Below are positions 1-59,097 of a stretch of DNA of 64,000 nucleotides, piece by piece (within the stretch, counting starts at the first letter, position 1; each line of letters starts with the position of its first letter). This DNA is from Guillardia theta CCMP2712 (lineage: Eukaryota > Protista > Cryptophyta): NCBI RefSeq assembly GCF_000315625.1, contig NW_005434607.1, positions 55,040 through 119,039 on the forward strand, in the 5' to 3' direction. The translations under genes were made by a program, and so were the position numbers. The notes under the pieces were generated by a model. That model was given only the letters and a program-made list of their open reading frames with translations. It was not told the origin of the DNA and searched no databases.

Positions 1-1
1 A

Positions 2-3000
2 TCCAGATGTCGGCCAGATCTTTTCGACCCGTACCCGTTGGTGATACACAAACCACGCCCCCTCTGTCTCCCTCGACCCTTCCCCGTACACTGACACTTG
101 CCCTGCCTCGCCGCGAGGAGACAGGCAGCTCACTTCCCACTCCGAAGTCACATTACACCTGGCCTGACGATCACCAAAGTTGATGTTCACCACCTCCTTT
201 GCATACCCATACCCCTCCACCCTGATCCAATCTCCTCCGTCCACGCCCCCGACTGAAGGCTCTATCCTCATCACCACAAACCCCGAAGTCCATTCGTACC
301 CAAACCCATGGGTGTCCCAGTCAACTCCATTCCTGCTGATCCCAACAGTCATGTTCCCCTGCCACGCTGACCTTGCACGCCCAGGCACCAACACTACCAC
401 CATGGTGGACGAGACATACTCGCTTACTTCTGCCCGCTGAGACCCGAGAGTGATCCCACACTCCCTGTCCAGATTCCTCCCGAGGATGGTGATCTTCTCC
501 TCTTGCCCCACCCTTGCTGCCGACGGCTTGATCTCATCGATCCGGGGTGGCTCGTAGTAAATGTAGCTTTGCTCTCCAACTATGTAATCAACGTCTCGTA
601 TCACAAGGCGAAGGCTCGTCCTCCCTCCTCCCTCAGACGACGCTGGCGCAACACACTCACAGACAGTACTCGATCGTACCTCTGCCCACACTCGCACTCT
701 TGCAAACGCACACAGCAACATCTCAGCCTCGAAGTCTTCTCCCTCGAGGAGCAAACGTGTCCCTCCCTGGCTGGGGCCTGACGTTGGATGTATGCTGGAC
801 ACAGAGGGTAAGCCCACGTATCGTACTACACACGCTGGGTTGATTTCCATGCTGTGTGCCGAGGGTCTCAGGCGATAGACTCCCTTGAGCTTGGGGGGGG
901 TCACGCATGTGGCCTGGTCCGAGTCTTGGACTTGACAAGACATCGCATGGTCGCCTACCAGCAACTCAAAGGTGACCCTGTGCATGAAGTGCCCCGACAG
1001 CGTGACCTCAGTGCCTCCAGTCTCGTAAACAGCCGATGGCCTGATAGCTTGTACCGATGCTTCGCCAAGGTAGGTGAAGTTGAAGCTGCTCTCGCAGTAC
1101 TTCACTCCTTGCATAGATAGCGATATCACCACCGAGCCTGCTGGATGCGGCGGCAGCTCGCAGGTCACGAGGCTTGACGAGAGCCACAAGCTCGTCGACT
1201 TTGCCGCCCCGAACCAGCACTCACGATCTTGTTCCTTCACAAACCCCTTTCCTGTCAGAATGACGCTTTCGTTCCTCCCGCTTGAGGAGCCCACGTCTGG
1301 CAACGCTGAAACTAGAGAGCACGCCTCCATGATCCGCACTTGACCGCTCGGATGCTCTGTGCACTCAGTATCTTCCATGCCTATGCCAATCGTCAGATCC
1401 TCCGGGACGGCTGTGGCAGGAATTGTGCACTCAATCTTGCTGTCAGACACAACCGACGAAGGCAAGACGGTCGTGCCCATACAGCAGAGAAACCCGTCTT
1501 GAAAGCCTGATCCCACAACCTCCAGCCTTGTAGGAACGGAGGTCACCCCTAGCGATGGCACTACATCTGTGATCTCAGGGGCTGCTATCACTTCCAGCAC
1601 GAGCTCTGATGTCATCGCGCCGCCATCTTGAGAGACATACAGCAGCTTTTCCCCTGGCGTCTGACTCGGCGACAGGCAAGCAAGCTTAGTCGAGGTCAGC
1701 CAGACTGCCAGTTGCGGATGCGCTTCATCATGTCGGAAGTCGCACCAGTATTCTGACTTATAGTCGAAGCCACGGCCAAACACCGTGATGCTGCCCGTCT
1801 GATGCGAGAAGAGCCTGCGAGGCTTCAAGTGCGAGACCGCGAAGCCTCGCAGAAACAAGAAGCTTGTCCCCGTGCTAAACCAGCTCCCTAACACCTGGAG
1901 ACTCAGAGTCGCGTTCCCGGCGTCGTGCCGTGGCGTCGTACAGCTAATCATGTTGGCAGCTATCCATCGCCCCCTGCTCGGCTCCGAGCCTTCTCCGAAC
2001 CTGCAACCCACCCCCGCGTCCGCTTCGAAGCCTCTCCCTATCAGCGTCACCGGGGTCTCCCCGCTCTCGGGTCCGCATGAGGGCTCGATCCGGTGCACCT
2101 CAGGCGCCTCGTAGAAGGATAACACCTTCTCGTCCTGCGTGAAGTCGACTCCGTTGAGCGACACCTCAACGTATACCTTCGGCTCCTCACGCGTTGCTGA
2201 GGCGATGCAATGCAGCAACGTCGAGGACGCAGTCCTTGCGGCGGTGACTTGAGTCCCCACTCGACACCACATGGAGTCCTCTCTGAAGTCTGTCCCGTAT
2301 ACTTGAATCTGCGTCTTTTGTTGGAGTTTGCAGAAGGAAGGTGTCAAATTCGTGATAGTGGGGGGTCTCACAAAAAGAAATTCTGCATTCCCAGAATGAA
2401 TTTCGTTTTCCATGCCAAGTATTTTGTCGATAGACATAGTTTGCTCTGTCGTTGTCATTGGTGTCAAACACTGTATTTGAGAGCTTGAAGGTCTTGATAT
2501 AAAATGGAATGGACGACAAGTAATTTTCTTTTTGATTATTGGATCGTAAGAAATAAGTATTTTGGTTCCTCCAGATATTGGACCAATAGTAGGATAAAAT
2601 CGAATCGAGCTGGTTATAATCTGGATGGCTGCGGTCAAAACACATCTTTCATCAGGATGTGAAATTCTAAACGAAAAATTACCCGCACGTTGCAAATAAA
2701 TGGTGCACTTCGCTGTAGTTGAGGAAATGATTTGAATGCCGGACCTTCGATTCTGAAACGAGCATAATGAATTGTTCAACATCTCCAAATTGCTGCCCCT
2801 CACAGTGATATCATGTTGGAGATCTTTGCTCCAGGAAATCACTGAAGGCATCACTTCCATGGACGGGAAAGAAGCAAATTTCAACAGGTGTCTATCACTC
2901 GTGCAGTCCTTCTCATTCAACCCGTACTCCACTGCTTGTACTGACGGGGAGACATAAGGAATGTGGCATACAAGCTTGGATGAGGTTACAAATCTTGTGG

Positions 3001-6000
3001 GTACAAATTTCTGTCCAACTTTGCACTTCCCCTGACTTTCAAAAGACGAACCAAAAATTGTTATCAAAGATGTATCATTGGTACAAACTTCGGAAGGAAA
3101 CAATGAAATTACTCGAGCAGCAAATTGAAGGAATTCAAATTTCAGTGTTTCCAACATGACCCGAGGATAGGAAGACGATTCATATACTTCCACCGTAACG
3201 AAACCTGCTGAGTGCTTTGGAGTAACACAGACAAACAACAATCGTGACTTTTTCTCACAGGACGATGCTGTGCGATCAAAGAGAACTTGCAAATTGTGTT
3301 GTTCAACATTCAAGACAACTGACACATAGTCTCCTCCTGCAGCTGATCCAGAACTTGGAACCAATTCGATATTACCACTTGAAATTGACAAAATACTGAA
3401 TTGTTGCGATGACCATTCAGTTTCAAATGCATCAGATACGAAGGATGGAGCACTGAAATATACTTGGAAGCTATGATTTCCTTCACGTAAAGAAAGCGAC
3501 ACACAAGTAAGTTTCGTGCTAGACGCCATGACAGTCATCATCATATGCTTTTCAGCTACGATGCATCTGTGTGATGACACATCAAAACTCTCTCCTATCA
3601 CTGTGACAATCGATGGTCGAAACGATCGAAGAACTTTCGGTGATATTTCCCAGACTCGTGGGGGTTTACGTACGATGATCTTGAGAGAATTCATGCTTGA
3701 TAGATGATCCATTCTTGCAGACACTTCAAATATTCCTTCAATCTCATTCGGAACTTGGCAGGTGATTGAATCAAAAGGAGCCGGGCTTGCCTCATATTGT
3801 TGAGATCGAACAATGCAAGAAATATTTTTGAATTTTGAAACAGATATGGAAAGCTTCAATAGCAAAAGAGTTGGTCGAAAAAGGAATCCAAAGGAAGGCT
3901 GGATAGACAAAATTCTGAAATCCTCACTCAAAAATTCAAAGTTCAACTTCGTTTGATACAGCTCGTTTTGGCCGTCAGTCACACGAAAGGAGTGATTACC
4001 CACAGTTCCTTCAGGAACGGTGCATTGAATGGAAGTAAAATTGATGTAGGCCGCTTTTGATCTGAATGATCCGAAAAGACATCTGTAGGTGGATTCCACC
4101 TGAAAATTATTGCCTAGGACCGTGACATAGGAACCACCCTGTTCGCTTCCATAAGAAGGAAAGATCGAGAGAACATAAGTATTCTGAAAAATCAGAACAT
4201 GTTCCATGAGGATTGACGGAAATTCCCTCCAAAACAGGTTGATTTTATTCTCCCCTACATTCAAAGAGACAAAAGTGCAACGAAGCATTGAAGAACTGAG
4301 AATAGAAGCCTCGTGATCCGCAATTTCACCCATTCGACATTTCAAGGTAAGGAACGGGGATGAAAGTCCAACACCAATCATGGTTATTGTGCTCACTTTG
4401 GTGTTTGTACGATTTGGAATGATTTGATCTATTCTCGGTCTTTGCACGAATGGAAACATGCCGCCGTTAGCAATATACTCTGATGAAGACGATTTGAGGC
4501 TGAACTTCACCTGCGAGGGAGCATCTAGAATCGGTGTATGACAAATGGCAAGTGATCGATTCACGACTGATGCACGTACGTTTTGGGATCCAAAGTAACA
4601 AGTTGTGGTCATATGCATGGAAAAGTTTTGTCCATGTACATATACACTGGTACTCTCATACAGAAATCCGACTGAAGGCTGGCATGTCACCAGTTCGACA
4701 GAGGGTACTTTCTGTGACATATTAGCTGTGACAAGGTTGAGTTTTGCTGAAGTTAATTCAAAGTCTATATTGTTGAAGCTCACATACATAGAAACATTGG
4801 AAATCAGTGGGACTGGCTCCAACGCGTACTGCACCTCGAAAGAGTTGTTTTGATTCTTCTGTGTGAGACGTTTCGATTGAACCTTTGCAAATTTCACCCG
4901 TACATCTGCATTCCAGTTAATGCTGCCAGTCACAGTCACAATACTTGCAGCATTTGCCAGGATCTGTGTAGGATTCACAAGAATATCTTGCGACGGCAGC
5001 CAGTGATGAAATATTTTTTCATCAGACATCAATTCATGAGCAACAAAGCTTATTCGAAACTCAGAAACAGCAACATTTGACTTTGGGGAAAGGCATTGCA
5101 AAGCAGTTGAAGACATGAATGTTCCAGCTGTAAAAATGGTGTGGGTCCCATTTCGAAACCTGAAAGTAAATGCACATTTCCAGTCATCTTGCACAAAATG
5201 GATGCCATAGATTTGAACTTTCGTGTTTCCTGTGCTCGGAGCATTATTCGGGAATATATCGAACAGTAAAGGCGTCGGAATCACATTCAAATGAGTTCTT
5301 GACAGTATACTGTCTCCCAAAAGCAACTCAAACTGCATTCTCTTAGGAGCCCCCCCTGGGAAAATACAGGAAACTGAAGTCGAATTCATCCACACAGTTC
5401 GCACACGATGACCATCAAAGTTGCAGGAGACATATGGAGAGAATTGAAAATCTACTTGGCCAGAGCATACAGCATACAATCTTGAGCCACCACAGCTATA
5501 TGCATATTCTGGAACAAGATTCCATTCATGTTGATCGGAGGTGTATAAGAATACAACTACTGATGTCTTGAGAGGTTGACTGTCTTGAACTAGAGTGAAT
5601 TGAACATAACCCAAGGCGTTCTTAGGTACCCAAGTGATAGCATGTGTCTTATTCACTCTATGAAGGTCTGCAATCGTCTCGCCAAATCTACACTTGACAG
5701 CAAAAGCATCTGGAAAGTATCCTAAGACAGTTATGGGATAACCACCCCGATGGCTCCCTGAAGTCGGGAATATACCTGCAAGAGAGAATCTGCTGTAATA
5801 TTCAAACCAAACGCCTCCATGCGATTGGGAAAATTTCGAAACAACGGAAACTTGCACCATGCCTTTAGCATGGGGCGGGGACAAACACGAACAAGACGTT
5901 GACGTCAAAAATCTGAAAGCAGCTCCCGCCTCATCGCCAAACCTGCAGAAAGATGACGAGACAATGAAGGTTCCTGTGATTGTCAGAACTGTTCCTCCAT

Positions 6001-9000
6001 CCAAAGGACCAGACGATGGAAAGGCACCAGAGATAAAAGTATCTTCAAATATTTCAATTTGCTTCGAATTTGTCATCACATTCGATGAGCGATCGAATGC
6101 AAATTGCAGCGAGACATTTGAAATACCAACTTGCCTTGCGAGAGGTACAAAGCATCGAGCAACACTTGAAGAAACCAACGCAAGATGAGTAAACTGCTGT
6201 CCAAACAAGCACTTCCATTGCTTGTAGGCGGGAGGAAAGATTCCTCTCAAGCTTATCAATTGACTGCCAAGCCTTGAAACTCTAGACGGAAACACTTCTA
6301 ATAGAGCTGGAGATTGAACAAACAAGAATTTGAAATCTAAATAAACAACGTGCGAATGCAGTAAAATCAAACTAAGAGTCGCGTTCCCGGCGTCGTGCCG
6401 TGGCGTCGTACAGCTAATCATGTTGGCAGCTATCCATCGCCCCCTGCTCGGCTCCGAGCCTTCTCCGAACCTGCAACCCACCCCCGCGTCCGCTTCGAAG
6501 CCTCTCCCTATCAGCGTCACCGGGGTCTCCCCGCTCTCGGGTCCGCATGAGGGCTCGATCCGGTGCACCTCAAGCGCCTCGTAGAAGGATAACACCTTCT
6601 CGTCCTGCGTGAAGTCGACTCCGTTGAGCGACACCTCAACGTATACCCTCGGCTCCTCACGCGTTGCTGAGGCGATGCAATGCAGCAACGTCGAGGACGC
6701 AGTCCTTGCGGCGGTGACTTGAGTCCCCACTCGACACCACATGGAGTCCTCTCTGAAGTTGACTCCTTCTACCTCCACAATCGTGTTGTCTACTCGTGGC
6801 ACTTGCAAAGGATGGATACCAGAAATGCTCGGAGGCATCGCAAACTCAAAGATCAGGTCAAGGCTGTCCCTTTCCTCCCGCTCTTGTCCTATTCCAAACT
6901 TGACGGCTCCTGGATATTCGACTGCTCGTGTTATGCAATAAGCCTTGTCGCTCTCAACTACTTCTGCTTCGACCGCTAGCTGCCCAAACCAGCATAAAGC
7001 ACCTCTCTGTGGCAAGTCGCTTGCCGACACCTCAACCCGAGTACCACCTCCCAATGGACCAATGGTAGGAGTGATCAAGATTGCCCTCGATCTTGGAACA
7101 GCCTCAAACACGACATCTCCAACACACTCATCAAGCCCAAACATCGAGACGCTCAGCGTTGTCGGACCTTCATGGCGTTGGGGAATCGAGCACTTCACCA
7201 GACTGGATGACAGCCACTGTCCGGGTTGAGATTGAGATGACGAGGCGTTCAAACGGCAGACAAGGTCCTCCACCGACAAGAAATGAGACCCGATCACTGT
7301 AATGGATGAGTGAAGTACCCCATTCACATATCCAGAAACCGTCGGGGCTGCTTCGTATGAAATGAGTATCTTGTTTGAGAAGCCATCTACTGCAGGTGTG
7401 TATATTGATAGCTCATACTTCCCCTGGGGCTGTGGAGAAAGATTGCATGTCACCATCGATCTGGAGTCTCCCATGACTGCAGTGCTGTCTCCGCCGACCT
7501 CGCAGAGGCTTAGTCCAGGCAAGAAATTCTGACCGTATATCGTCACCACTCCTCCTTTGTTGGATAAAGCTCGCCGAGGTATCACGTTGGATATTTCTGG
7601 GACTCCAGCGTCAACAAAAGAGAACGAGCTCGTTACAAGTGATCGCTTGTTTCCTATCAGCAGCTCGAGATGGACCTCCCCTGCATCATGCGGGGGAGCT
7701 GTGCACCTGACCTGAGTGGACGAGATGAGCGACGACTTGACTCTGAGCTGATCAAACACGCATTCGATTGAAGCATGCGGAGGGAATACCCCGCTGACGT
7801 AGACCGCTGTGCCGCCACTCACGTCTGCCATGGACGGCTGTGCGGTCATCACAGATTCACGAGAGTGAAACATGATCGTGTATGGCATGCTCTTGTGACT
7901 CGAATCCTCTGACTCCAAGGTCAACGACATGTTGCCCACGGCCTTTGTTGGTCGCTCACACACAACTGCCGAGGCCGAAAGCGGCGTCAACCTTGATCGT
8001 AGATGCTGATACCCAAACCGGCAGTACTGTAGCAAAGAACCGCTGAACCCCTCGCCAATCAACGTGATGAGATCTGTGGCACTATCGCTTTGTGTCGGCT
8101 GGACGTTCTTGATGTGTGGGACCTGCTTCAGCAGATACTGCACACTCTCTCCCTGCACCTTGTCATCCATGCTTCTGATTGTCACTTGGACACCGTCAGC
8201 TTGTAATGCCGGGACGACGCAGGTCAAAGATGTAGACGTCAAGACTTGAGCTGGTTCGCTCGAAGGTGTCTGATCGAACCAGCACGCAAGCCCGGCTTCC
8301 GCGAGGAAGTGAGAGCCCAATATCGTCACCATGGACTTCAATGCAGTGGGCCCTTCAGAAGGAAGCACAGCAGACACCTTCATAGGCTCATACACCAAGA
8401 ATCCCAGGCCTTGGCTGTGGTGGTTACCGATGTGTACCGAAATGCTCACCAGACCTTGCAAGACTGGTGGAAGGTAGCATTGCACAACGTCAGACTGAGT
8501 GAATGATCCAGGCGTCATGATGCCATTCATCTCACAGGCAGCACTCCCACCGAACGACCACCCTTGGTCGTCGAGAAGGACGTTTATCTCAACTCCACCT
8601 GCGGAAGGTCCTACGGAGGGGAAAATATTTTTTATCAAATGCATGTTTTCGTTCAGGAAGAATGGCCTGGAGAATATTTTTCCATCATTTGAAAGTGTTA
8701 CAGAGCTGTTTCTTGCAAGGATGTTTGTATGGGTCGAAATTGATAACAATATTGGAGATTTTTGATGTATCTCATCCTTGCCGAAGATGTGGGATCCAAC
8801 TTTGCATTTCGAAAGATTTGTTATTAGAAAATTGGATCCCGAAATTTCTAAGAGAACTTTTCCTGGGGTACTGATGTAGTCGACTGCTACTTGATCTATG
8901 CTGGGGATTGGTTCCATGAATGTCACATTCTCTCCGCTGCAGACAGAATCATTGCTGAATATTTCAAAATGGTTTATCTCAATTAACGATGGACTTCCAC

Positions 9001-47100: not shown

Positions 47101-50100
47101 CTGTTGATTCAAATCGATTGCAACAGTCTGCTGTGATACAATTTCTAGGGTGACGCGAAAAGACTTGATCAAATCTTGCAAAGGTGGAACGATGCACACT
47201 AATAAAGAACTGCTCATCAATGTGGACCTGACACGATTCCCAAATCTGCACTCCAAGTCGTGAAACAGGTACAAGCCAACTACAGAAACCGCGTATCTCC
47301 CAGTTGGACGGCCGAAAGATGGATTGATTTGTAAGACTTGGACAGAATAATTGGTCTCGGAAAATAAGAATTGACCCAGAATCAAGTTTGGGAAAGAGGT
47401 GTTCTTGTAGACAACAGAAAGCTTTTCGAGGCCGGGAAGATTTGGTGGAGTGATGCATTCTACGTTCGATTGCCCATGCTCAGCTTGTACTTGTTGATCT
47501 CCAAACATACATTCTTGGATCATAGCTACCGATCCCACAAAATTGATCCTGACTTTTGTGCCTCCAATCCATGGTCCTTTGGATGGTTCAAAGGTCCACG
47601 TGCTGGAGGATATAACGTTCATTGGAATTTTGCTGATAGTGGAATCGCCATTCGCAAAGAGTAATCCAATACTGTAATTTCCTTGTGCAAGCTCAGGTAT
47701 GCTACATAGTACATCGCTTTCGGTACAAATTTTGGCAACAATCTGATGCATCCCCATCCGACAAACAGGGAGAGGGTTACAATCAAAATTTTCTCCAAAT
47801 ATTGTCAGCAAATGCTTTCCACCCATAACATTCAGACGGGGTGATATATCTTGAATCGTAGAAGATTTGAGATATTCGAATTTGTGACCTGTGTCATGAT
47901 TTCCATGAGAGTGGAATGAAATGTGTATGTTATGAATTCCACGGTGATTTACCTTTGGTGTGACAGATTGAATGATGCCCTCCTGACATACAATTGGGCA
48001 TGAAACTCCAGCGATCAGAATGTTAGAAATAATATTGCAAGAATCGCGCCCTTCAAATTGAATGGATATCAGCGTTCCACCATCTACTGGCCCTCGTGAC
48101 GGAATCACAGAAGTTGCAAAATGGTCAAAGAAGAGAAATGGAAGGGTCGATATTAATCTTCCGTTTCCAATCAAAGACAGCAACACCTCCTGTGGTTTTG
48201 AAGAGATGATCGTTGCAGAGATGGCAGAATAATTCAAATACTGCGCGTGAAAATACGATGAATCAAACACGACAAAGTACGTATTTTCACTTATAAAATC
48301 CATACCCATGATTGTAATCTGCGTGGGATTCAGTATTCTTCCCACCATCGGAGAACTTCTGAATATCGATGTACTACTGGTAAGAGCGACTGAATATATC
48401 TCGTTCGAACGAAACAAGCTACTTTCGATACCGATTCGCAGCTTGAAAGGGTTTGTATACCTGCTGTCAACTCCTTGAAATAATTGTGGCAAAGCACAAA
48501 TAAGAAGTGATCTATTCAATGCTTTGGCGGTGAGCACAACAGAATTATCAACGATGCATGTCCAATTTTGTTGCTGATCGAGTTCTGTAGCTATAGCATA
48601 AATCATACTTCTGCTGTGTGAGGCTTGTCGAAGAAGAAAGCTGTCCAACAACAAGATTTCGACTTCGTCAAGTAAAGCATTCCCATCTAGAAGAACCTGC
48701 AGCTTTTGCTTGCCAGGAGGTCCAGGGGGAGAATCACAGCTGATTGATGACTTTGAAATTTTTCGGCCGATCACAGTGAAATGTGACCATAGACACCAGG
48801 CTTCATGGAATGACAAGGGATGAATGAAGCTCACGACCATCTGCACACCACCTTCTGATGGGCCTAGAGAAGGAGATATGCTGGCTACGACAGGTTTGTG
48901 AGACAAGCTATCCCGAACTGTCACATTGCTCGGGACCATGATATCACCCACCATGATCGCAACTTGACAACCCGTGAAAACACCTTGATCTGTCGCTATA
49001 CTACATGAGATAGAAGACGAGGAAAGCAAAGTTCCTTGAAACGGATTTTTAGAACATGAGGCAAAGACGCATTGAAGATTGTATCCCTGTCTAAACCCAG
49101 TTCCAGAAACGATGACTTTGTATGAAGTCAACGAATATTCTACCGATATTGCTGAAAAGAGAACAGGAAGTGATTCAATCAGAAGAGTTTTTTGATTGCT
49201 GTAGAATGCATTATCTTTCGATGCCAGCCAGAAACTGTGATTTCCAATTGCAAGGAGCGGAACTTTGCAAGTGACAATATTGGCACTCATCATTCTAGCC
49301 AATACAATTGTCTTAGGTCCAAAATGGCACAAAATTGACTCGCCGAAGGAATATCCGCTGCTTCGCACAGAAATATTCGTAATAGACCTATGAAATAAGG
49401 CCGCTGGTACAATTTCTTTCAAAATCAGCTCTTTCCGTATGAAGAGCTGAAAGTTAAAGGATTCTGAACCAAAACCAATTTCAACTTTTCCTGCAAGTTT
49501 ACCAGGAGGCATTGCTGGCAAAAATGCTTTCAATAGACTCGAGGTCATCAAAACACTTCGCACAGGCGGATGGTTCTCCAAAGACAAAGCGGTATTCATG
49601 TGATCAGCAAAATTTAGTCCGTAAACTGTTAACGCCAGACGTCTGCTAGCAATAGCAATGCTTGGCAGGACGTTCAAAACCTTGGGATATATTTTCGATT
49701 CAGATACATTTTGAGAAGAACATGTCAGTTTCCTGGAAAGCACGCCGCACTGTTGAACGATGTCTAGGTGGTCAGATGAAAAATCATAAACGCTTTGACA
49801 CTCAAATGAGGAAATATTAGTAAGATAGGTCGAAAGGATAAAGGATTGTCCAAATATGCAATAAATGGGACAATCCAAGTCTGTTGAGTATGAAAATGAT
49901 ATACGATGAGAGTTTCCAACACGATAATGCGCTAGAATCTGACACGATAAGATTTGATGAGAAAGTTCGAAAACTATCCCTGGATCAACCTGGCTTGATC
50001 CAAGATGGACATGATGAAAACCACAATCAAAATCCTTTCTGATCAAGACTTTTAACTGGCTTGAGGAAACATAGTGAAAAGCTATTCGTTTGCTGCCAAA

Positions 50101-53100
50101 ATAAAATCCACTTTCGTATTTTTCAACGAAGGATATCCCTGTTACAGTGACCAGCTGCTCTTTTCCGCATACGCTTCTCTTAGGAAACAATGAGATTATC
50201 TTTGGAGCAGAAAAATACAAAAATGAAAACGAGTTGTGCAATGATGCACCATCTACTTGACTAAAGGAAAGCCGTACCAACCATGGTCCTGGAACATCGA
50301 CTGAATAGCATTGCAATAGGCTTGACGAGAGCAAAGTGCCGACACTCCAACCCGCATCGCCAAAGTGACAAACCCAATCCGAAAACGAATTGAAGTGTAT
50401 ACCATTCACTCGTATAAGTGTCTTTCCAGATGACGGGCCTGATGAGGGAGAAATATGCAAAGCTTGTGCATCTTCATGGAAAGTGAATGTGAACAACCCA
50501 TAGATCCTGTCTTGCTCCAAGTCAGATATGATTTGTAGTGGCATTTGGCCTATGGAGCTCTTTGGAGTTATGCAGTAATGTACTCTTGAGACACTTTTCA
50601 AAATCGGCGATTGGCTTTCACCAAAAAAACAAGAAACGCTTTGCTTTGGATCAAAGTTTCCGTGAATATGAACATTCGTTCCCCCGTCCACTGGACCATG
50701 CAAAGGAAAAATCTGTTGCACATTACTAGCAATGAAATACTCTACCCATGCTTCATTAGAATGATCGGACTGAAAGAATTTGGTGTGGGATAATTGGAGA
50801 GAAATATTCCCAGGAATACTATAGGGTGGTACCATGAACCGGTAAGAAGTAGACGACAAATATACTCCACCAGACAATGCACTCTGTCCTATCCACCCAA
50901 ACAAAGTAGTAGATGGAAAGTTTTTTCCAACCATAGTCAATGAGGATCCCCCAGATGTCGAAAACATGCTCGGATAAACGTAACTTATGATTATTTTGTC
51001 ACGAACTTGAATGTTGAATTGTATTGCAACAGCACACACTCCAACGGATATTGTCATCACACTTGTCCCTTGATTTCTACAAACAGGAATCGAACATAAT
51101 CCTTGCGAGTGAGTAAAGCGATCGATATACATCTTTGATTGGAGCCCACAAAGATTGCAAACTAAATGATCCGAAAAGCTCGAACCGTACACAGTTACTG
51201 TGGCACTGGCCCCTGCTACAAGGATGCTTGGTTCAATCGATTCAAATCGCGGTCTGGCAGAAATACTAATGTCAACCTTATTCGACTCTACGGATGTCTC
51301 GCCTATCCTTGCTACGCTTACAGGGACGATCCCTTCGGCCATGGAGCCGGGTGACATGCAAGTGATTAGACTGCTGCTCAGTACAGTGCTTGAGGATACT
51401 TGTTGCCCAAATCGACACTCCCAAGCACCTGCCGCGAAATTACCGCGAATCGTTACAATCGAAGATCCACAGGATTGCTCGGAAAGCGCACTCGGATGCA
51501 CGCTGAGGATAACAGGTCTGGTAGAGTACAAGAACACTACTGGAGAGCTTACATTAGTACCCATCCCGTTCTCCAGCGATACATTCACTGTCCCTTGCTG
51601 GTTCTTTGGTGCCTTGCAAACAACCTGTGTTCCCGAGACAACCCTCCCACGACTTCTAGACTCTCCAAATATGCACCACGTTTCAAGTTCCGCTATGAAG
51701 TTACTTCCCATGATCGACAAATCTATCCCCCCTTCTACAGGACCAAACGATGGTAGCACCGCTGTCACAGTTGCCATGGGAACATAGATCACTCGATGAC
51801 CTGTGTCCACGAAGTGTATCCCATCTGAGCTCAGAAAGGCAGAGACAGCTCCAGGTCCGTTCGGAGGACTGAGACACTGTACCAGTGTTGAGCTGAATAC
51901 AGTTCCATAACGTACAGTATCGGTATTGCCCCCAAACCGGCACAGGGCAGTAGATGAATTCCAATCCGAGACAGATACGTTCAAAAGTTTCGTATCCTTT
52001 ACAGAAATGTGTAGAATTGTCTTTATCGGAGGAACATTGCCTGTCCGGTACTGATATTTGAGAAAATTTTTGGAAAGCGTCTTGTTTTCGAATATTATTT
52101 GGACCGCAACAGTTTTAATTGTGTCAACCGATGGCGTGACACATGAGACGTGACTTTGAGATATTGTATCTACATTTGTAATGAGGTCATCGAATAAGCA
52201 TTCCAGCGTTTGATGAAATGACAAGACACGAAGATCGTAATTGTTGGTTGTGATTCTCACTGTTTGGCCTCCAAATGTTGGCCCTTCTGACGGATAAATA
52301 CTGAATATTTTCAGGTCAGTTTCAAAATAGAAAAACTTTTCCTTGAGAAGGATTAGGTCGCTTTGATGACACAATCCTAATGTCACGTTTCCAGCTGAAT
52401 GCCTCGCAGTCTTGCAAATAACAAGAGAATTGGATACTACACGAGCTGCAACCAAGTTTTGGCCAAACATACAATTCATTTCAACATCCATTGGAAAATT
52501 TCTGCCAAGAATTGAAACCGAAGTATGCCCATCTTTTGGCCCTTGGGTTGGAAATATCCGATAGATTTCTAGAGTCAGTGCGAAACATTCAAATCCTATT
52601 TGTGCAGTGGATTGCATTCTCAAGTCTGTAACAGCAACATGAACAAAGCCCTCACCGTGGCATTTCGGTGTGGCCATACGAATCATCGATGACGAGATTG
52701 AGGAGCTAAAGACCTGAGCTCCATCGAAATGAATAAGGGTATGCAGGTCAAAGTTTGATCCAAACACAGTTGCAATTAATCCTCCAGACACTGGACCGCG
52801 AGATGGAATGATTTCGAGTAGTTGAAGTACGCTACCATCGTTGTAGGCAAACTCCGCAAATCCAGCAACAGTCAATGATCTTTCACTTGATTGCCAATAA
52901 CAAAACAATCGCACTGTTCCTGATTTCCCTTGTGGCAATTCTGTCGTCAAAATAGATCCTGCTTCAAAGCTAGCGGATACCAAGTTGTTTTGAAAGTAGC
53001 AAGTTCCAGATCCATTTCCTGCAACTGCTGTAGTAAGGATGGAAATCCGAGTACCACCTTGAGTTGGCCCAATCGATGGAGAGATTGAAATAATCTGGTG

Positions 53101-56100
53101 CATATGTAGCTCTCCAACCTCAGTGGATTGATGATTGCTCGATTCAAATTCTATTACTGCTTTCGAAAAATTCAATGACGAAATAGGACATTCTGCCACT
53201 GATGAATTGATTACCAAAGCCATTGTTTGCACACCGTTGAGCCTGCAAGAAGCTTTGTCATTGGTTGAAAAGTTGGTGCCCATAATTAAGATATCTAAAA
53301 GATCTGAACGACTAAATGAAACAGTCCAACTCTTGACTTCCCACAGATCGGAGAAAACGGTTATGTCGGACATTGTTGATCGCACTGGCAGATCATAAGT
53401 ATAAAGGATAAATTGAAATGATCCAGGTTGATATCTGCCTATGACACAATGCAAAATAGAGCTCGTAAGATATTTTGAGCTGAAACGATACCCCACATAC
53501 ATATCTTCAGAGATTCCGCATCCCGTACTACCATCCACAAATTGAGAGCCGATAACAGTGATTTTCGCCCCACCTGCTGCAACAGCACTGGGAAACAATT
53601 TGAAGATCGATGGTTGTTTGATAAATTGAAAATTCAACTTAGAGCCTAATAGGTTGTAACCATCCAATGATATCGTGAAACGGACAAATTCAAGAGTTGA
53701 TGCTGGAGTAACACAAGCAATCAACGAGTTTGAGAGACGTGAGCCCATGACAACTTGGCTTCCAAAAACGCAATATGATGAATTTGCGTTCAAGTCTCCT
53801 TCCATAACAGCTTTGACTATGTTTCCTCCATCTGCAAATCCATAGTTTGGTTCTATCCGGAGCAAGAAGATCGGACTGAGAACCTGAATAAAGATGTGCG
53901 AATCAATGTAATTCGAGCAATCATTGCTGACTTGCAAATTGAGAAATGATATGCCATATGGTGAAACATGACATTTCGCAAGACTGCTCGTGAAAAATAT
54001 AGCTTTCTGTACGTTCTTGCCACTCTTGCAACAAAACTTTGCGGATTGGATGAAGTTACTTCCAAAGATCGTCAGCATGAACCTTGTGTTGGCGTGAATT
54101 GTTGTTGGTAAAACCGAAAGAACTTCAAGCTTTCCGTATACAAACAAATTACTAGCTCCAAGGCTTGCCGTTGTCGCATTTGAATATAGTTCCAGACTGA
54201 CCTTCCCCTCAATTTCTGGAGAAACATGACATATTAGATGAGATTTATTGTAATCGACCAATCTGCAATCTCCCTTTGTGATGTAGCACGACAATTCAAA
54301 GTTCAGATTTCCGCTGTAAGACAAAGTTAGAATTGAAACCCGATTCAGCTCAACCGTGCTTGGCTGAATCGATGTGATCATTAAATCTGTAAGAAATTGA
54401 AATTTGTTCAGATTGGACGAAATGTGTTTAGAGATCAATTTGAAATTCACGGTCCCCACCATAGAGGGTGGGGTAAAACATTGAACGAGTTCCGAAGACT
54501 TGAAAGAAGCAAGGACTGTAGTATCATTAAATGAGCACACGAGTTCAGACAAGTTTTCTGAGATCGCAACTTTGTCCATAGAAATCGAAATGAGCTCTCC
54601 ACCTGAAGCTCTACTCACGCTTGGTTTGACATTGAGAATACGCAAGGGACTTACGATGCGAAGTTCAACAGGGCTAAACGCATAGTCAACAGAGTTTAAC
54701 GAGACTGCAACTCGAACTGAAGACACATTAACAGCAGGAAGCCTGCTATGCAAAAGAGAGGAAGATCTGAATTCGCACTTCTCAGATACTACAGCTCCAA
54801 ATTTGCAAATCAAATCGATATCTGACAAAAATGATGAGCCATAAATAAGAATGACAGACGTGCTGTCAGCTGTAACAACCATCGGGTTGATTCCAATGAC
54901 AATTGGCGCATGGTAGAACAAGAATGAATTATCACCAACCAACTCTTCTTCACCGTAGGAGACTGAGAAAAACACGATTCCTATTATACCTGACCTTGGG
55001 GAGTTGCAAACAAGCTCTGTACTGCTCATGATTGTAGCTGTTGTCTGTCCAACTTCGGAAAATAGACAGCGCATCTGAGAGGATGGAGGGAATTCAATTC
55101 CGTGCACCTTCAATTGACTTCCACCTTGAACTGAGCCACAAGATGGTCTTACCCGATGCACAACGGATTGCGTCTTATAAAGGAACAAGTGGCTCGATTT
55201 GAAATCCAAACGATTTTTGAATCGTATACCAAAGGATTTCAAACCTGCTTCATTGGAGGGCAAAATGCAACATGATGTGGATGAGTTCACTCTGACGAGA
55301 GTGCTTGTGACATATCCAAAGACGCAAACTACCTCATTTGCAATCAAATCGTCATGTAACCAATGGATCGAAACATTGATTCCCCCAGCAAGTGGCCCAA
55401 TGGTAGGATACAAGCTCAACACACTTGGAGTATCAAGGAATCGAAAAGAAAAATTTGAAGAGACTCGTGAGCCCTCCAAAAAGACTGAGAATGGAACTTC
55501 GGAAGGAGGGTGCGCCGGAATATCGCAGGTGGCAAGAGAACTAGTCAGGATGACGGCCACAACGTGCTTGAATCCAAACGAACACTTCATGCCGGAATTG
55601 AAGGATTGTCCTTGCAAGGACACAAGCTCTCCTGAAAGACTGAATCCCTCAGATGGACTCATGGCCTTCAGGTACGGTAGTTCCTGATAACGAAGCAGGG
55701 CATAATTCTCACTGAAAGTCAATCCATTATTAGCAAATCTTAACTGCAGATTCAAAATATCCAATGCAGGAAGGTGGCAAAGTACCATAGAACTTGATAT
55801 CACGGTGGTCTCAAATTTCAAAGTGCTTGATAAGCCACAAGAGGCATTTGAGTTGTTGACTGCGAAGAAACCACCTTGCATTGAGACTGTCAGATCACTT
55901 TGTGGCTTTGCTATGGATGGAAAGATGTTAAAAATTTGCTCAGGTTGATAGGACTCATACAGAAAGTCACCTTTAGCACTGATTGTCGACACTGCAACCA
56001 TGATAGGATTATGCTGCTGACTCAATACTGCCAGCTTGCAAGAAATTGTATTGTTCGCAATTGTCAATTTTATGCACTCTGATGATCCCACCTTGCAAAC

Positions 56101-58523
56101 TACATCCGTAGCATTACTTAGATCGCGATCAAGGGTGATTTCCAAGATAGATCCACCAATTTGTGGGCCAGAGCTTGGAAAAATTGAAATGATATGGATG
56201 CTGGAACTATATGAAAAAAGTATGGATGACACGACGAAGTCCACACCATTGTTTGAAATCGCAAAGGGTATGGATATTTCAGACAGAGCTCCAGGAGACC
56301 TGCATGTAGCCTCATTTACATTCACAACCACCATGTTGACAATCACTTCGCCAAATCGACAGACTGACAGCGAATTCTTGAAGAATTGCTCCCCAATGAC
56401 TGTGACCAATGAGCCTTCTAAAGGCCCCACTATTGGGTAGAATTGCTTGATCAAAGGCGAAGCTAGAAAGAGAAAAGGAATGGAACTTGTAGACTGAAGA
56501 TTACTTCGAAACATGAACATCCTTGGCCAAATTTGAACCAAGATCTCTTTTTCAACGTGAGGAGGTGAAGGGCAAGTGACAATGGAAGACGTCAAGACAG
56601 TGCCTGTGGTCCAGGTAAAGTCAAATAAGCATCCACAGGAGAAATTTTCGGAAGATGAAAATGGGAAATTTGTTCCAGAAAGATTTACAATTGTGCTTCC
56701 GTTGACAGGCCCAATTGATGGGAAAATATGACTTATTATGGGAAAGATTGAGTATTGGTATGGCAGAGGCGCAAATACAAAATTTTGACCATCCAAAGCT
56801 AGGCTTAAATTCACACTTGCGGCTGCATAGGGTGGGGCTGTGCAAACAATTGAATTTGTTGACACAACTGAAGCAGGTACTTCGAGGTTTGAAAACTTGC
56901 ACATGGCCAAGTCTGTGAACAAAAACTCGTATCCTATGAGTGTTATGACATTATTTCCAGAAACTGGTCCAAGATTTGGTTGAAAGTCAGTGATGGTGGG
57001 TGATGAGAAGGATAGAAAACGTATTTGGTCTTCGCTCCAATCTAGCCCGTTGCTGCTTACTTGTATTAAGTAATTTCCGACGGCAAGGTTGGGTGAAATA
57101 CATATCACGAGAGTTGATGAAATGGTTGATGAGATGGTTGATGAGGTTGAGAGATTAACACTTGAAAGAACATCTGAGTATTTACAAAAAGCATGTTGGC
57201 CGAACGAGTCCCCAACCACGGTGACGAACGTTTCAGAGTTCTCCATTCCTAACGACGGGGTAATTGACCTGATGAAGGGCTTTTGAATGTACTGGAACGC
57301 AAATCCAGTATCGAAGAAGTCATTGTTATTGACAGAAAGTTCTACTGTACAAATGAATAATCCGAAAAAAATTGGTGAAAAGCAATTCAATTTCGTTGAT
57401 GAAATCAAGGCCGCCGTTACATTTTGACTCCTGCAAAATCTGCACCAACAACCTTCTGAACAGTCTAAAAAGTTGTTTCCAGCAACATCCAACATCGTGC
57501 CTCCTGCAAGTTCACCCTTGGAAGGGCTCAATCGGGATACATACCATGCTTCAACCACGGTAAGGGTTGCACCGAAGACAAAAAAGTCAACTCCATTCGT
57601 ACTGATTCCGACTGAAATAAGATTCCTTCTTAGACGCGGAGCATGACAGGCCACCAATGAAGATGATATGTACACGGCCGTTACAATTTTTGAATCGATT
57701 CGGCAAACCAAAGATTGACTATCAACGAATCCGAAGCCATAAAACTGAATCCGTGCATTACTGCCTCTTGCTAACAACCTTGGTCTTACATCACGGATTT
57801 GAAGTTGTGCTGTTCGAAAAGAGTCAGAATACAAGCCAAAAATGAAACGACACTGTGCATACCTGTATACACAAAATCAATCGAGCCGTAAGAAAAGTCT
57901 ACACCATTGCTGGATACACCCAGCCGTACGGTAGACTCCGGCATTGCAGGAGAGAAACACTCAATGAGCTGGCCAGATATCCAAGCAGCTGACACCACCG
58001 TTTCTCCAAATTTACAGGACAGCGAGGGGGTGTTCTCAAACCCGTTCCCAGATATACGAACAAGAGTTTCTCCGCGCTCAGGTCCATTGTTGGGGAAGAA
58101 GGTAGAGACAACATCTTGAGCTGCAAAAATGGATATTCAAAATCTTTCTGTGAGCAAGAAAAGGTTATTACCAGCATAATAGAACGCCAAAGATTCTTGA
58201 GAAAAAGAGTATCCGCCGTCTGTGGAAACCTTGAGAGCAACGCTCTTCGTGTTTGGCACATCTTGAGGAGGCGATGCACAAACTATGAGACTTGAGGAGA
58301 GAATGGCAGGCGATATAAGGTGAGATTCACCAAATTTGCAGAGAGTTAGATGATATCCATCAAGCTTTCCCAAAAGAAGATTGCTTCCCACAACAGTAAC
58401 TTCTGTTCCGCCGTGAGCTGGTCCAGCAGCAGGAAAGACCCCATCGATGTGTATATCAAGATTTGATTCGACAACACAAAGGCCAAGGAGAGAGAGGAGT
58501 AGAGAGAAATTGCAGTAAGGCAT
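44104..58523 (-). CDS. Giant tandem IPT/TIG repeat protein, proximal part (exons 58172-58523, 57863-58120, 44104-57809; 4,771 aa to the TAA as assembled)
   Basis: The 4576-aa ORF repeats the pattern P-x-x-G-P-x-x-G-G-T-x-V/I-x-V/I-x-G-x-N-F...C-x-F-G...C-x-x-P...S-x-N-G-x-D-F about every 90 aa. Splicing two GT-AG introns joins it in frame to ORFs 57786-57998 and 58137-58547, which encode the same domain type. Confidence 0.9.
45098..45887 (+). repeat. Block E copy 1 (790 bp; repeat at 51188-51977, offset 6090)
   Basis: The protein segment SVSDWNSSTALCRFGG...ASATVTVYG occurs twice in the 4576-aa ORF. Two substitutions seen, one giving QQGKV vs QQGTV. Confidence 0.95.
51188..51977 (+). repeat. 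Block E copy 2
   Basis: Matches 45098-45887. Confidence 0.95.
57810..57862 (-). other. Intron 2 of the giant IPT gene (53 nt, phase 1)
   Basis: GTATGC...CTGAC...CGAACAG. Removal gives FVYT-A-QLQIRDVRP in the frame of the 4576-aa ORF. Confidence 0.85.
58121..58171 (-). other. Intron 1 of the giant IPT gene (51 nt, phase 1)
   Basis: GTAATA...TTTTGCAG. It contains an in-frame TGA, and removal gives FYYA-A-QDVVSTFFPNNGPERG. Confidence 0.85.
58464..58523 (-). other. Predicted N-terminal signal peptide MPYCNFSLLLSLLGLCVVES
   Basis: First ATG of the locus, followed by a hydrophobic core (FSLLLSLLGLCVV) and then the first IPT domain (IHIDGVFPAAGPAHGGTEVTVVG). Confidence 0.7.
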
Positions 58524-58733: not shown

Positions 58734-59097
58734 ACTCAAAGTTAAGTTGGAGATCTTTACTCAAAGTTAAGTTCACACAGGCTGTCGCACACCGGGCCAA
58801 ACGGCGAGAAGAGAAAAGACAGCGAGAACCAAACCTAATCCTGCCGACTGCTGTCCCCCAAACTTAACGGATACCTTCACTTAACTGCGCGCAGGACAAG
58901 TCCCCCTGTAGATCAGTACGAGGACAATACCGACTTATCCTTTACTCAAAGTTAAGTTAAAAAGATCATGATCAGTACGGTACGCTGAGGCGTTCGTGAC
59001 TCCAGCCTGAGTAACCCTCTTACTGCTTCTTGGACTTGGAGGCCCTCGTACCGTCCTGCGAGAGTCTGGCAGGCCGGGGTTTACTCAAAGTTAAGTT
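58734..59097 (+). promoter_or_regulatory. Four direct copies of the motif (TTT)ACTCAAAGTTAAGTT in the divergent intergenic region
   Basis: Copies at 58734-58748, 58756-58773, 58941-58958 and 59080-59097, all in the same orientation. The repeat is directly visible; a regulatory role is inferred from position only. Confidence 0.5.

What the first reader, a model, noticed from the sequence alone, without database searches (positions are those of the whole stretch)
2..58523. Titin-scale secreted protein: at least ~19,470 aa of tandem IPT/TIG domains, still open at the window edge
Seen: a signal peptide followed by IPT repeats at every site sampled over about 58.5 kb, with a conserved C-x-F-G / C-x-x-P cysteine pair and frequent N-x-S/T sequons. 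No other domain type was noticed. Joining the two frames at ~44120 gives about 4,767 + 14,706 codons, or roughly 200 domains at ~90 aa each. Known: extracellular IPT arrays occur in plexins, MET, fibrocystin and the Dictyostelium TgrB1/TgrC1 allorecognition proteins, with far fewer domains. Inference: at about 4 nm per Ig-like domain this could be a filament approaching 1 micrometre. Candidate roles are a cell-surface fibril, adhesin, prey-capture structure or recognition/decoy protein.
Basis: partly seen in the sequence, partly recalled or inferred. Interest (0 to 1): 0.93.

Follow-up and report, generated by a model that had tools for sequence, protein, structure and literature searches.

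The report
Giant 240-domain IPT/TIG secreted protein gene
A cryptophyte alga carries a gene that, as assembled, encodes a secreted 2.3-megadalton chain of about 240 immunoglobulin-like IPT/TIG domains and nothing else, one of the longest protein-coding genes predicted in any eukaryote; it is conserved domain by domain and transcribed in a sister genus, but its function is unknown.

Summary
On the minus strand there is an ATG at 58523, a signal-peptide-like start and two GT-AG introns of 51 and 53 nt. The reading frame then runs 5,248 nt past the window's left edge to a stop conserved in Hanusia phi. The total is 21,228 codons (2.32 MDa), about 240 IPT/TIG domains of 87 aa, a 281-aa tail with no recognised domain, and no transmembrane segment.

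The frame break near 44110 is not an intron. It is a hybrid assembly consensus: three read sets carry one extra base there, which restores the frame. The same reads show that the 5.8-kb block 38319-44102 exists twice, with one copy missing from the assembly, so the true locus is longer or split.

Evidence that the gene is real:
- A wild relative differs mostly at synonymous sites (22 synonymous, 13 not).
- Three long Hanusia phi transcript fragments are colinear at 55-60% identity with almost no indels, while domains within the array share only about 20%.

The public model covers only the last 2,442 aa. The genome holds at least two more loci of this scale; this scan's first-stage readers had already noted giant IPT/TIG genes on other DNA of this genome. 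Full-length transcript, protein and function remain unshown.

The parts
58172..58523 (-). Exon 1: start codon at 58523, a signal-peptide-like N-terminus (MPYCNFSLLLSLLGLCVVES|N) and the first TIG domain
   Evidence: First ATG after an in-frame stop. A hydrophobic core is followed by V-E-S, and the first TIG domain begins at about residue 24, leaving no room for a plastid transit peptide.
58121..58171 (-). Intron 1, 51 nt, GT..AG
   Evidence: Removing it keeps the frame and the usual linker between domains. No RNA confirmation.
57863..58120 (-). Exon 2 (TIG domain 2)
57810..57862 (-). Intron 2, 53 nt, GT..AG
   Evidence: No RNA confirmation.
44116..57809 (-). First part of the large exon (piece A, to residue about 4,770): 51 detected TIG domains
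   Evidence: Pfam TIG E 2e-225. Contigs of run X1 reproduce the assembly from 45858 to about 58800. Hanusia phi transcript fragment P0079 (3,103 aa) is colinear with residues 847-3936 at 56.8% identity with 12 gap columns.
44103..44115 (-). Hybrid assembly consensus that causes the apparent -1 frame break
   Evidence: Runs X1 and X2 have +C behind 44110 and T>G at 44113 and 44114. Run X5 has +G behind 44111 and the same two changes. A second X1 contig matches the window exactly up to 44115 and then continues into sequence absent from the assembly.
1..44102 (-). Rest of the large exon inside the window (piece B). It continues 5,248 nt beyond the left edge to the stop, giving 16,457 codons with 178 detected TIG domains and a 281-aa tail
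   Evidence: One open frame of 16,482 codons. Pfam finds TIG only. Differences from the wild relative X5 are 22 synonymous and 13 non-synonymous, plus one 3-nt indel. Hanusia fragment P0156 covers residues B2846-4544 with 0 gaps, and P0002 covers B15142-16456 to the last residue.
38319..44102 (-). Block R1, 5.8 kb and GC-rich: two copies in the reads, one in the assembly
   Evidence: One X1 contig of 5,784 nt at depth 154 splits at 44102 into two contigs at depths 61.5 and 56.8. The R1 to piece A depth ratio is also about 2 in X2 and X5. The assembly holds a single copy.
9897..14047 (-). 4.15-kb GC-rich cassette whose two overlapping halves recur at 1-2289 (99.7% identical) and 6371-8620 (99.5%)
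   Evidence: Both offsets (9,897 and 5,427 nt) are multiples of 3. GC3 is 0.60-0.67 here against 0.40 in the unique parts.
45092..45891 (-). 800-nt repeat, 99.4% identical to 51182-51981
   Evidence: An X1 contig of 5,360 nt spans exactly the interval between the two copies, confirming the arrangement.
35307..35748 (-). 442-nt repeat, 99.1% identical to 37698-38139. A 253-nt pair also lies at 18649-18901 and 24673-24925
   Evidence: Both offsets are multiples of 3.

Best explanation
This is a real, selectively maintained nuclear gene of a cryptophyte alga. The organism is most probably Guillardia theta, but that is inferred, not given. The gene encodes a giant secretory-pathway protein made almost entirely of about 240 directly abutting plexin/MET-type IPT/TIG domains, followed by a conserved 281-aa tail of unknown fold.

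Proposed mechanism, inferred from here on. The signal peptide takes the chain into the ER. Each domain is locked there by its conserved disulfide. The chain is N-glycosylated, and probably O-mannosylated on the conserved B-strand Thr/Ser by TMEM260-like enzymes. It is then exported as an unanchored beads-on-a-string rod roughly 0.9-1 micrometre long that forms or scaffolds an extracellular filament, such as a surface coat, a periplast-associated fibril or a flagellar appendage.

Each domain keeps its own identity and position between genera, and almost no indels occur. The array therefore behaves like a position-specific scaffold or ruler, as titin does, rather than a freely expandable spacer.

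The frame break in the window is an assembly artefact. The real locus carries an extra copy of a 5.8-kb block, so the true product is probably longer than 21,228 aa.
For: Shown:
- An open frame of 16,482 codons plus one of 4,771, with only TIG-clan Pfam hits.
- 229 profile hits at an 87-aa period.
- A three-domain AlphaFold model (pLDDT 84.6, all beta) whose best structural matches are plexin A1 IPT3-6 (E 8e-14) and the MET IPT domains. Sequence search of solved structures also gives plexin and MET.
- The Cys pair in 179 of 229 domains, sequons 246 against 155 +/- 10, and no membrane span.
- Median identity between domains of 20%, so the array is old and not a recent expansion.
- Purifying selection against a roughly 97%-identical wild relative: 22 synonymous and 13 non-synonymous changes, codon positions 6/7/22, and one in-frame 3-nt indel.
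- Three Hanusia phi transcriptome fragments of 3,103, 1,729 and 1,321 aa, colinear with the 5', middle and 3' parts at 55-60% identity with 12, 0 and 31 gap columns. The third runs through the tail to the same stop.
- One extra base at the frame break in three read sets, and contigs that bridge the junction in X1 and X2.
- The 3' 4 kb held at 1.00, 0.97 and 0.40 by runs that look like RNA.

Inferred:
- O-mannosylation. Nine TMEM260-like loci are present. The MET O-mannose sites Thr676 and Thr761 (PMC10214176) fall on profile column 18, which is Thr in 124 and Ser in 27 of 229 domains.
Against: - No full-length transcript or peptide evidence exists. The same presumptive RNA runs hold none of 41500-47400. 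A raw RNA run gave 3 reads over 5.9 kb in a 6% sample.
- The assembly collapses block R1. The link between the 5' 14 kb and the 3' 43 kb is verified only across the 44.1-kb junction, not at the left end of R1.
- As listed, the X1 and X2 differences would create an in-frame TAG at the junction. I read it as TCG only from the tallies of change types and by analogy with X5.
- The signal peptide has no basic n-region and was judged by eye.
- The introns are unconfirmed by RNA.
- The tail has no recognisable domain and could not be folded.
- The extracellular role is inference only.
Confidence: 0.7

Rival explanations
1. Assembly chimera. The 5' 14 kb (piece A) and the 3' part left of block R1 belong to two different TIG-array genes, either paralogues or divergent alleles, that share the near-identical 5.8-kb block. 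The assembler joined them through the collapsed block.
For: - R1 has two right-hand continuations of equal depth in run X1. One of them, called U here, is absent from the assembly.
- The window's 13 nt at 44103-44115 come from the U path, which is the signature of a collapsed repeat.
- The genome holds many giant TIG paralogues.
- The left end of R1, about 38319, was not examined with reads.
Against: - The piece A to R1 junction is bridged by contigs in X1 and X2 and is present in X5.
- U reads in frame as a normal TIG-domain end plus linker into R1 (and notebook), which fits an internal tandem copy equally well.
- No other copy of R1 or U exists anywhere in the 87-Mb assembly. The missing piece is therefore probably short rather than a whole second giant gene.
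- Even under this rival, one uninterrupted frame of at least 16,482 codons remains.
Confidence: 0.15
2. Broken or decaying gene. A nonsense codon (TAG) or frameshift at about 44110 ends translation after about 4,770 aa. The 43 kb downstream are untranslated, or are expressed only as short 3' products from internal starts such as the public 2,442-aa model.
For: - The listed X1 and X2 differences literally give ..VPEP-TAG-FV...
- RNA evidence in this organism covers only the 3' 4 kb.
- The public annotation starts at an internal Met.
Against: - 16,457 codons without a stop downstream of the junction.
- Synonymous-biased divergence downstream of the break, at 41300-42700.
- The wild relative reads TCA (Ser) at that codon.
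- The tallies of change types require one further T>G in both X1 and X2. The simplest place is 44111, which gives TCG (Ser).
- Hanusia phi transcribes colinear orthologues of both halves.
- The 3' bias is what poly(A)-selected libraries give for a transcript of about 64 kb.
Confidence: 0.1
3. Membrane-anchored receptor stalk. Like other giant IPT/TIG genes noted in this genome, the array is the ectodomain of a receptor, and its membrane module is missing here through misassembly or an unrecognised downstream exon.
For: - Earlier first-stage notes on other pieces of this genome describe IPT stalks fused to multi-pass modules.
- The locus on contig C40 has about 9,000 non-TIG codons after its TIG array.
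Against: - The Hanusia phi transcript fragment ends one residue after the same final residues, so the stop is conserved.
- No hydrophobic span exists anywhere in the 21,228 aa.
- The tail has no paralogue in the genome.
- The public model's 3' intron is contradicted by the Hanusia alignment.
Confidence: 0.05

Closest known systems
Plexin and MET/RON ectodomain IPT domains
   Same: They are the best sequence and structure matches. They share the same Cys pair, the same GGT-x-x-T-x-x-G B-strand motif that carries the TMEM260 O-mannose in MET (PMC10214176), and an extracellular setting.
   Different: Those proteins have 3-6 IPT domains (from the PDB entry titles for plexin and from memory for MET), sitting between a Sema/PSI head and a membrane span with a cytoplasmic signalling domain. 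Here there are about 240 domains and nothing else.
Fibrocystin (PKHD1) and PKHD1L1
   Same: Large proteins of about 4,000 aa, extracellular and rich in IPT/TIG. PKHD1L1 forms a surface coat (from memory).
   Different: They also carry G8 and PbH1 domains and a membrane anchor (from memory). None was found here. This array is about five times longer.
Titin and other giant Ig-array proteins
   Same: Hundreds of Ig-like beta-sandwich domains occur in series. Identity between neighbouring domains is low, while each position is conserved between species. This suggests a ruler or scaffold about a micrometre long.
   Different: Titin is cytoplasmic, built of I-set Ig and Fn3 domains with a kinase and elastic segments, and spread over hundreds of exons (from memory). 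This gene is secretory, disulfide-bonded, all IPT/TIG, and almost entirely one exon.
Giant bacterial repeat adhesins (for example the Marinomonas ice-binding adhesin extender and SiiE)
   Same: They are secreted rods of about 100 Ig-like domains that project from the cell. A tetra-repeat of one such extender appears among the structural matches (entry 6xi3).
   Different: Their repeats are near-identical and variable in number, and they carry terminal ligand-binding and anchoring modules (from memory). Here the domains share about 20% identity and their number and order are fixed between genera.
Protist IPT/TIG arrays already in databases
   Same: They belong to the same domain family and many are secreted arrays. 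They come from stramenopiles (Heterosigma, brown algae, the diatom Chaetoceros, Aureococcus, oomycetes), other cryptophytes (Baffinella, Rhodomonas) and some bacteria (Kineosporia). They are 21-31% identical to this gene.
   Different: The longest among the best 150 of 1.84 billion representative proteins is 7,822 aa. Many also carry other domains such as PF05587, PF07699 and PF13385. None is described in the papers I could search.
PKZILLA-1 of Prymnesium parvum
   Same: It is a microalgal gene whose giant size (45,212 aa, larger than titin) escaped standard annotation (10.1101/2024.01.29.577497).
   Different: It is a multi-enzyme polyketide synthase, not a structural repeat protein, and is supported by transcript and peptide data that are lacking here.

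Membership tests
IPT/TIG domain family (Pfam PF01833, clan E-set) | Profile match above the curated cut-off | tested here: met
   Scores of 730, 909, 572, 950 and 314 bits on five chunks against a cut-off of 20.9.
IPT/TIG domain family (Pfam PF01833, clan E-set) | Ig-like beta-sandwich fold closest to solved IPT domains | tested here: met
   Three-domain model with pLDDT 84.6, all beta. The top Foldseek matches are plexin A1 IPT3-6 (E 7.9e-14), plexin A2 and A4, and MET.
Extracellular (plexin/MET-type) IPT subgroup | Conserved intradomain cysteine pair and entry into the secretory pathway | tested here: met
   Both Cys are present in 179 of 229 domains, and sequons are enriched. The N-terminus looks like a signal peptide but was judged by eye, with no predictor available.
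Plexin family | Sema and PSI domains, a membrane span and a cytoplasmic GAP domain | tested here: not met
   Only TIG-clan families were found over all 21,228 aa, and there is no hydrophobic span.
Fibrocystin / PKHD1 family | G8 and PbH1 (parallel beta-helix) domains plus a C-terminal membrane anchor | tested here: not met
   No such Pfam hit and no membrane span.
Titin / obscurin-type muscle giants | Cytoplasmic I-set Ig and Fn3 arrays with a kinase domain | tested here: not met
   The start is secretory, the domains are IPT/TIG, and no Fn3 or kinase hit was found. Titin appears only as a generic Ig-fold match.
TMEM260 (GT117) substrates | Thr/Ser on the IPT B-strand at the position O-mannosylated in MET, and the enzyme present in the genome | tested here: inconclusive
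   Profile column 18 is Thr or Ser in 151 of 229 domains and aligns with MET Thr676 and Thr761 (sites from PMC10214176). There are 9 PF11028 loci. Glycosylation itself cannot be tested with these tools.
Single-gene, single-product giant protein | One transcript and one polypeptide over the full length | not testable with these tools
   Only the 3' 4 kb is held by presumptive RNA runs.

The most novel reading that the evidence does not exclude
The true gene, with the collapsed 5.8-kb block restored, would exceed 23,000 aa. It would make a single micrometre-long, heavily mannosylated IPT filament in which every domain has a fixed address. Such a filament would be an extracellular molecular ruler or scaffold that sets the dimensions of a cryptophyte surface structure, such as a flagellar hair, a periplast fibril or a scale tether. 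Together with at least two sister loci of 21,000 to more than 31,000 codons, this would form a previously unrecognised class of titin-scale extracellular proteins in chromist algae.
Probability: 0.15. Interest if true: 0.85.

Novelty: new variant of a known kind. Interest (0 to 1): 0.62.

Why it matters
If the product is made as predicted, it would be among the largest proteins of any eukaryote. At 21,228 aa or more it compares with about 35,000 aa for titin and 45,212 aa for PKZILLA-1, and it would be the largest known secreted array of a single domain type.

It also shows that a reference algal genome published years ago still hides titin-scale genes behind fragmentary models. The public model covers 11% of this one.

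The domain-by-domain conservation without indels between two genera offers a natural test of what constrains very long Ig-like arrays outside muscle. The gene also gives a candidate for the unidentified proteins of cryptophyte surface or flagellar filaments.

The co-occurrence with an expanded TMEM260-like family makes IPT-specific O-mannosylation testable outside animals.

Tried and rejected
- Intron at 44058-44107. The GTAAG..CAG pair of 49 nt gives the wrong phase. The only phase-compatible GT..AG is 29 nt, against 51-53 nt for the real introns. The linker spacing fits a 1-nt shift, so the intron reading was rejected, and the reads then confirmed the shift.
- Search with the 337 aa upstream of the junction, hoping to recover read-derived protein fragments that cross it. 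Nothing was found at E <= 0.001.
- Search with the first 1,000 aa after the junction. Only paralogue-level hits of 21-28% identity came back, apart from the Hanusia fragment P0156, which maps further downstream.
- Two metagenome-contig scans, one with a protein and one with a DNA pattern across the junction. Neither found anything.
- The look-up of encoding contigs on the public model was withheld.
- The 30-nt start of the alternative path U is not in the assembly, even with 2 mismatches allowed.
- C-terminal tail: no Pfam family, no paralogue in the genome, Atlas scores below 0.8, and a failed AlphaFold model from two sequences with pLDDT 28.7. The two internal gaps that I translated and read (one also run through Pfam without a hit) look like degenerate TIG domains rather than other domains.
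- Higher-order super-repeats: no lag from 1 to 79 domains gives a mean identity above 0.30.
- Diatom origin: there is no silicon-transporter family hit.
- Literature: no paper in the held library links Guillardia or cryptophytes with IPT/TIG arrays or giant proteins.

Full report
WHAT IS THERE

The window has two very long open frames on the minus strand: 44107-57876 (4,590 codons) and 2-44197, which runs off the left edge. The window is G000:C67:55040-119039 of an 87.1-Mb assembly in 669 contigs. After fetching the contig to its start, the second frame continues to contig position 49791, window -5248. That gives a single frame of 16,482 codons without a stop.

Upstream, an ATG at 58523 is the first in frame after a stop 10 codons earlier. 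Two short GT..AG introns (58171-58121, 51 nt; 57862-57810, 53 nt) join three exons in frame and keep the inter-domain linker pattern. The conceptual product is 4,771 + 16,457 = 21,228 aa, 2.32 MDa, pI 6.4.

DOMAIN CONTENT

Pfam finds only the TIG clan over the whole length. PF01833 scores 314-950 bits on each of five chunks. PF17960 and PF20144 also hit, along with a weak Ig-like PF09099.

A profile iterated on the protein itself detects 229 domains (51 + 178) with a median period of 87 aa. The gaps of 60 aa or more would hold about 11 more domains, roughly 240 in all. The two internal gaps I translated and read look like degenerate TIG domains.

The consensus is I..I.PS.G...GGT.VTV.G..F.......C.FG.....A...SSS...C..P....G. 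Both cysteines are present in 179 of 229 domains. Sequons are enriched (246 against 155 +/- 10 in shuffles), and no 19-residue window is hydrophobic enough for a membrane span.

A three-domain segment folds as three beta-sandwiches (pLDDT 84.6). Its best structural matches are plexin A1 IPT3-6 (E 7.9e-14), plexin A2 and A4, and MET. Sequence search of solved structures gives the same proteins.

The N-terminus, MPYCNFSLLLSLLGLCVVES|N, looks like a signal peptide. The first domain follows at once, which leaves no room for the transit peptide of a cryptophyte plastid protein. This was read by eye. The last 281 aa match no family, have no paralogue in the genome, and could not be folded.

THE FRAME BREAK IS AN ASSEMBLY ARTEFACT

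The GTAAG..CAG pair at 44107-44058 gives the wrong phase. The residues on either side fit one linker only if one base is missing.

Contigs from three read sets were laid on 41200-47100, and all carry one extra base exactly there.
- Run X1 (2021, possibly the source strain) and run X2 (2011) have +C behind 44110 and T>G at 44113 and 44114.
- Run X5, a metagenome holding a roughly 97%-identical wild relative, has +G behind 44111 and the same two changes.

With the extra base the frame runs through. X5 reads ..LAIVPEPSFVRFEPSSS...

As literally listed, X1 and X2 would read TAG at that codon. However, X1's tally of change types (T>G 4, C>T 2) and X2's (T>G 3) each need one more T>G and one more C>T than are listed. 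The other records are fully accounted for. The graph forces a change at 44103, where the reference base is C. The remaining T>G is most simply at 44111, which gives TCG (Ser), a synonymous partner of X5's TCA. I put this at about 85%; raw reads would settle it.

A COLLAPSED DUPLICATE

In X1 a single 5,784-nt contig (window about 38319-44102, called R1 here) has depth 154. At 44102 it splits into two contigs of depths 61.5 and 56.8. One is the path into piece A. The other matches the window exactly up to 44115 and then continues for at least 584 nt into sequence, called U here, that is absent from the whole assembly.

The window's 13 nt at 44103-44115 therefore come from the U path and the following sequence from the piece A path, which makes a hybrid consensus. 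R1 is present once in the assembly. Its depth is about twice that of piece A in X1, X2 and X5.

Read on the minus strand, U gives ..SQILQILACP|IFVRFEPSSS, a normal domain end and linker in frame with R1. The second copy therefore also lies inside a TIG array.

Either the gene contains R1 twice, making the true product about 23,000-24,000 aa, or an allele or paralogue shares it. I could not test the left end of R1.

Elsewhere the reads confirm the assembly. One 5,360-nt contig spans exactly the interval between the two copies of the 800-nt repeat, and another runs from the second copy to about 58800.

IS IT A LIVE GENE?

- A stop-free frame of 16,482 codons cannot arise by chance.
- Among the 35 listed differences between the window and X5 in 41300-42700, downstream of the break, 22 are synonymous and 13 are not. 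They fall at codon positions 6/7/22, and the one indel is 3 nt.
- The domains share only 20% identity with each other (5th-95th percentile 12-30%).
- Three proteins from the Hanusia phi transcriptome are colinear orthologues:
  - P0079 (3,103 aa) matches residues A847-3936 at 56.8% identity with 12 gap columns.
  - P0156 (1,729 aa) matches B2846-4544 at 55.4% with no gap.
  - P0002 (1,321 aa) matches B15142-16456 at 60.2%, running through the tail to the last residue.

Order, number and length of domains are thus fixed between genera, and the orthologue is transcribed in its 5', middle and 3' parts.

In this organism, runs that look like RNA hold the 3' 4 kb at 1.00, 0.97 and 0.40 but none of 41500-47400. 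A raw RNA run gave 3 reads on 5.9 kb in a 6% sample. This fits the 3' bias expected for a transcript of about 64 kb, but it does not prove a full-length transcript.

ORGANISM AND ANNOTATION

The genome has 23 hits to the cryptophyte phycoerythrin alpha family and no silicon transporter. The nearest orthologues are from Hanusia phi.

The public protein for this locus (P0001; NCBI and UniRef) has 2,442 aa. It equals residues B13904-16339, starts at an internal Met, and ends with a predicted 3' intron that the Hanusia alignment contradicts. I found no paper in the held library on cryptophyte IPT arrays.

A FAMILY OF GIANTS

The TIG profile finds 1,350 first-look candidates in the genome, with other open frames of 8,500-11,300 codons.

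| Locus | Strand and range | Size | ORFs | TIG-like domains |
|---|---|---|---|---|
| C56 | + strand, 182,231-244,910 | 21,033 codons | six abutting ORFs | 215 |
| C40 | + strand, 431,333 to beyond 525,000 | more than 31,000 codons | ten ORFs with N gaps | 236, plus about 9,000 non-TIG codons |

Earlier first-stage notes of this scan describe such loci on other DNA of this genome. Outside this genome, the longest of the best 150 relatives among 1.84 billion representative proteins has 7,822 aa. Named relatives come from raphidophytes, brown algae, diatoms, pelagophytes, oomycetes, other cryptophytes and some bacteria.

HOW IT LIKELY WORKS (INFERRED)

- Signal-peptide entry into the ER, then disulfide locking of each domain and N-glycosylation.
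- Probably O-mannosylation. The MET sites Thr676 and Thr761, which TMEM260 modifies on the IPT B-strand (PMC10214176), align with profile column 18, which is Thr in 124 and Ser in 27 of 229 domains. The genome also has nine TMEM260-like loci.
- Export without a membrane anchor.
- With an 87-aa period and an 84-position domain there are no flexible linkers. At roughly 4 nm per domain, about 240 domains give a rod of about 0.9-1 micrometre.
- Position-specific conservation without indels argues for a scaffold or ruler with addressable sites rather than an expandable spacer.

Part of the array is nevertheless dynamic. The GC-rich cassettes (GC3 0.52-0.67 against 0.40 elsewhere) coincide with the near-identical in-frame duplicates. 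That pattern would fit GC-biased gene conversion.

VERDICT

The gene is real and under selection, and the frame break is an artefact. The exact structure of the locus, the full-length product and the function remain open. I class it as a new variant of a known kind: an extreme, single-domain-type member of the extracellular IPT/TIG arrays.

Noticed in passing
G000:C56:182231-244910 (L019-L025) and G000:C40:431333-525000+ (L009-L018): Two further loci of titin scale lie on one strand each. C56 has 21,033 codons in six abutting ORFs with 215 TIG-like domains. C40 has more than 31,000 codons in ten ORFs separated by frame switches and N gaps, with 236 TIG-like domains and about 9,000 non-TIG codons. 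Other frames of 8,500-11,300 codons lie on C25, C2 and C134.
   Followed up: partly
window 58734-59097 (minus strand), upstream of the gene: The motif AACTTAACTTTGAGT occurs four times between GC-rich palindromes. The 18-mer AACTTAACTTTGAGTAAA occurs 1,179 times in the genome (546 forward, 633 reverse) against 0 for the reversed control. It is a dispersed repeat or a common regulatory element.
   Followed up: partly
G000: C107:121365, C58:495254, C208:65978, C15:986065, C45:449840, C69:140894, C16:218689 and two weaker sites: Nine matches to the TMEM260-like family (PF11028). The human member of this family is the O-mannosyltransferase specific for IPT domains. These loci sit in a genome with more than 1,350 candidate TIG domains.
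   Followed up: partly
window 1-16000 and 35300-44100: The GC-rich blocks (GC3 0.52-0.67 against 0.40 elsewhere in the same ORF) coincide with the near-identical in-frame duplicates and with the block that is collapsed in the assembly.
   Followed up: partly
window 43218, 44049, 45500: These are single bases where every read set that covers them disagrees with the window: X1, X2 and X5 at the first two, X1 and X5 at the third. They are probably consensus errors of the assembly.
   Followed up: no
L003:4752-5100 (3' end of the gene, outside the window): The public 2,442-aa model splices out about 80 nt near the 3' end and ends in a different frame. The unspliced reading is conserved to the last residue in the Hanusia phi transcript.
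   Followed up: yes
runs X5, X7, X8: Metagenomes labelled freshwater, aquatic and lake water hold a roughly 97%-identical relative of this gene. X5 holds 0.46 of the sampled words at depth about 14. This is unexpected if the organism is the marine alga it appears to be.
   Followed up: no
window 61071-62972 (minus strand): The upstream neighbour is an ordinary N-terminal acetyltransferase A auxiliary subunit gene (PF12569, E 1e-184).
   Followed up: yes
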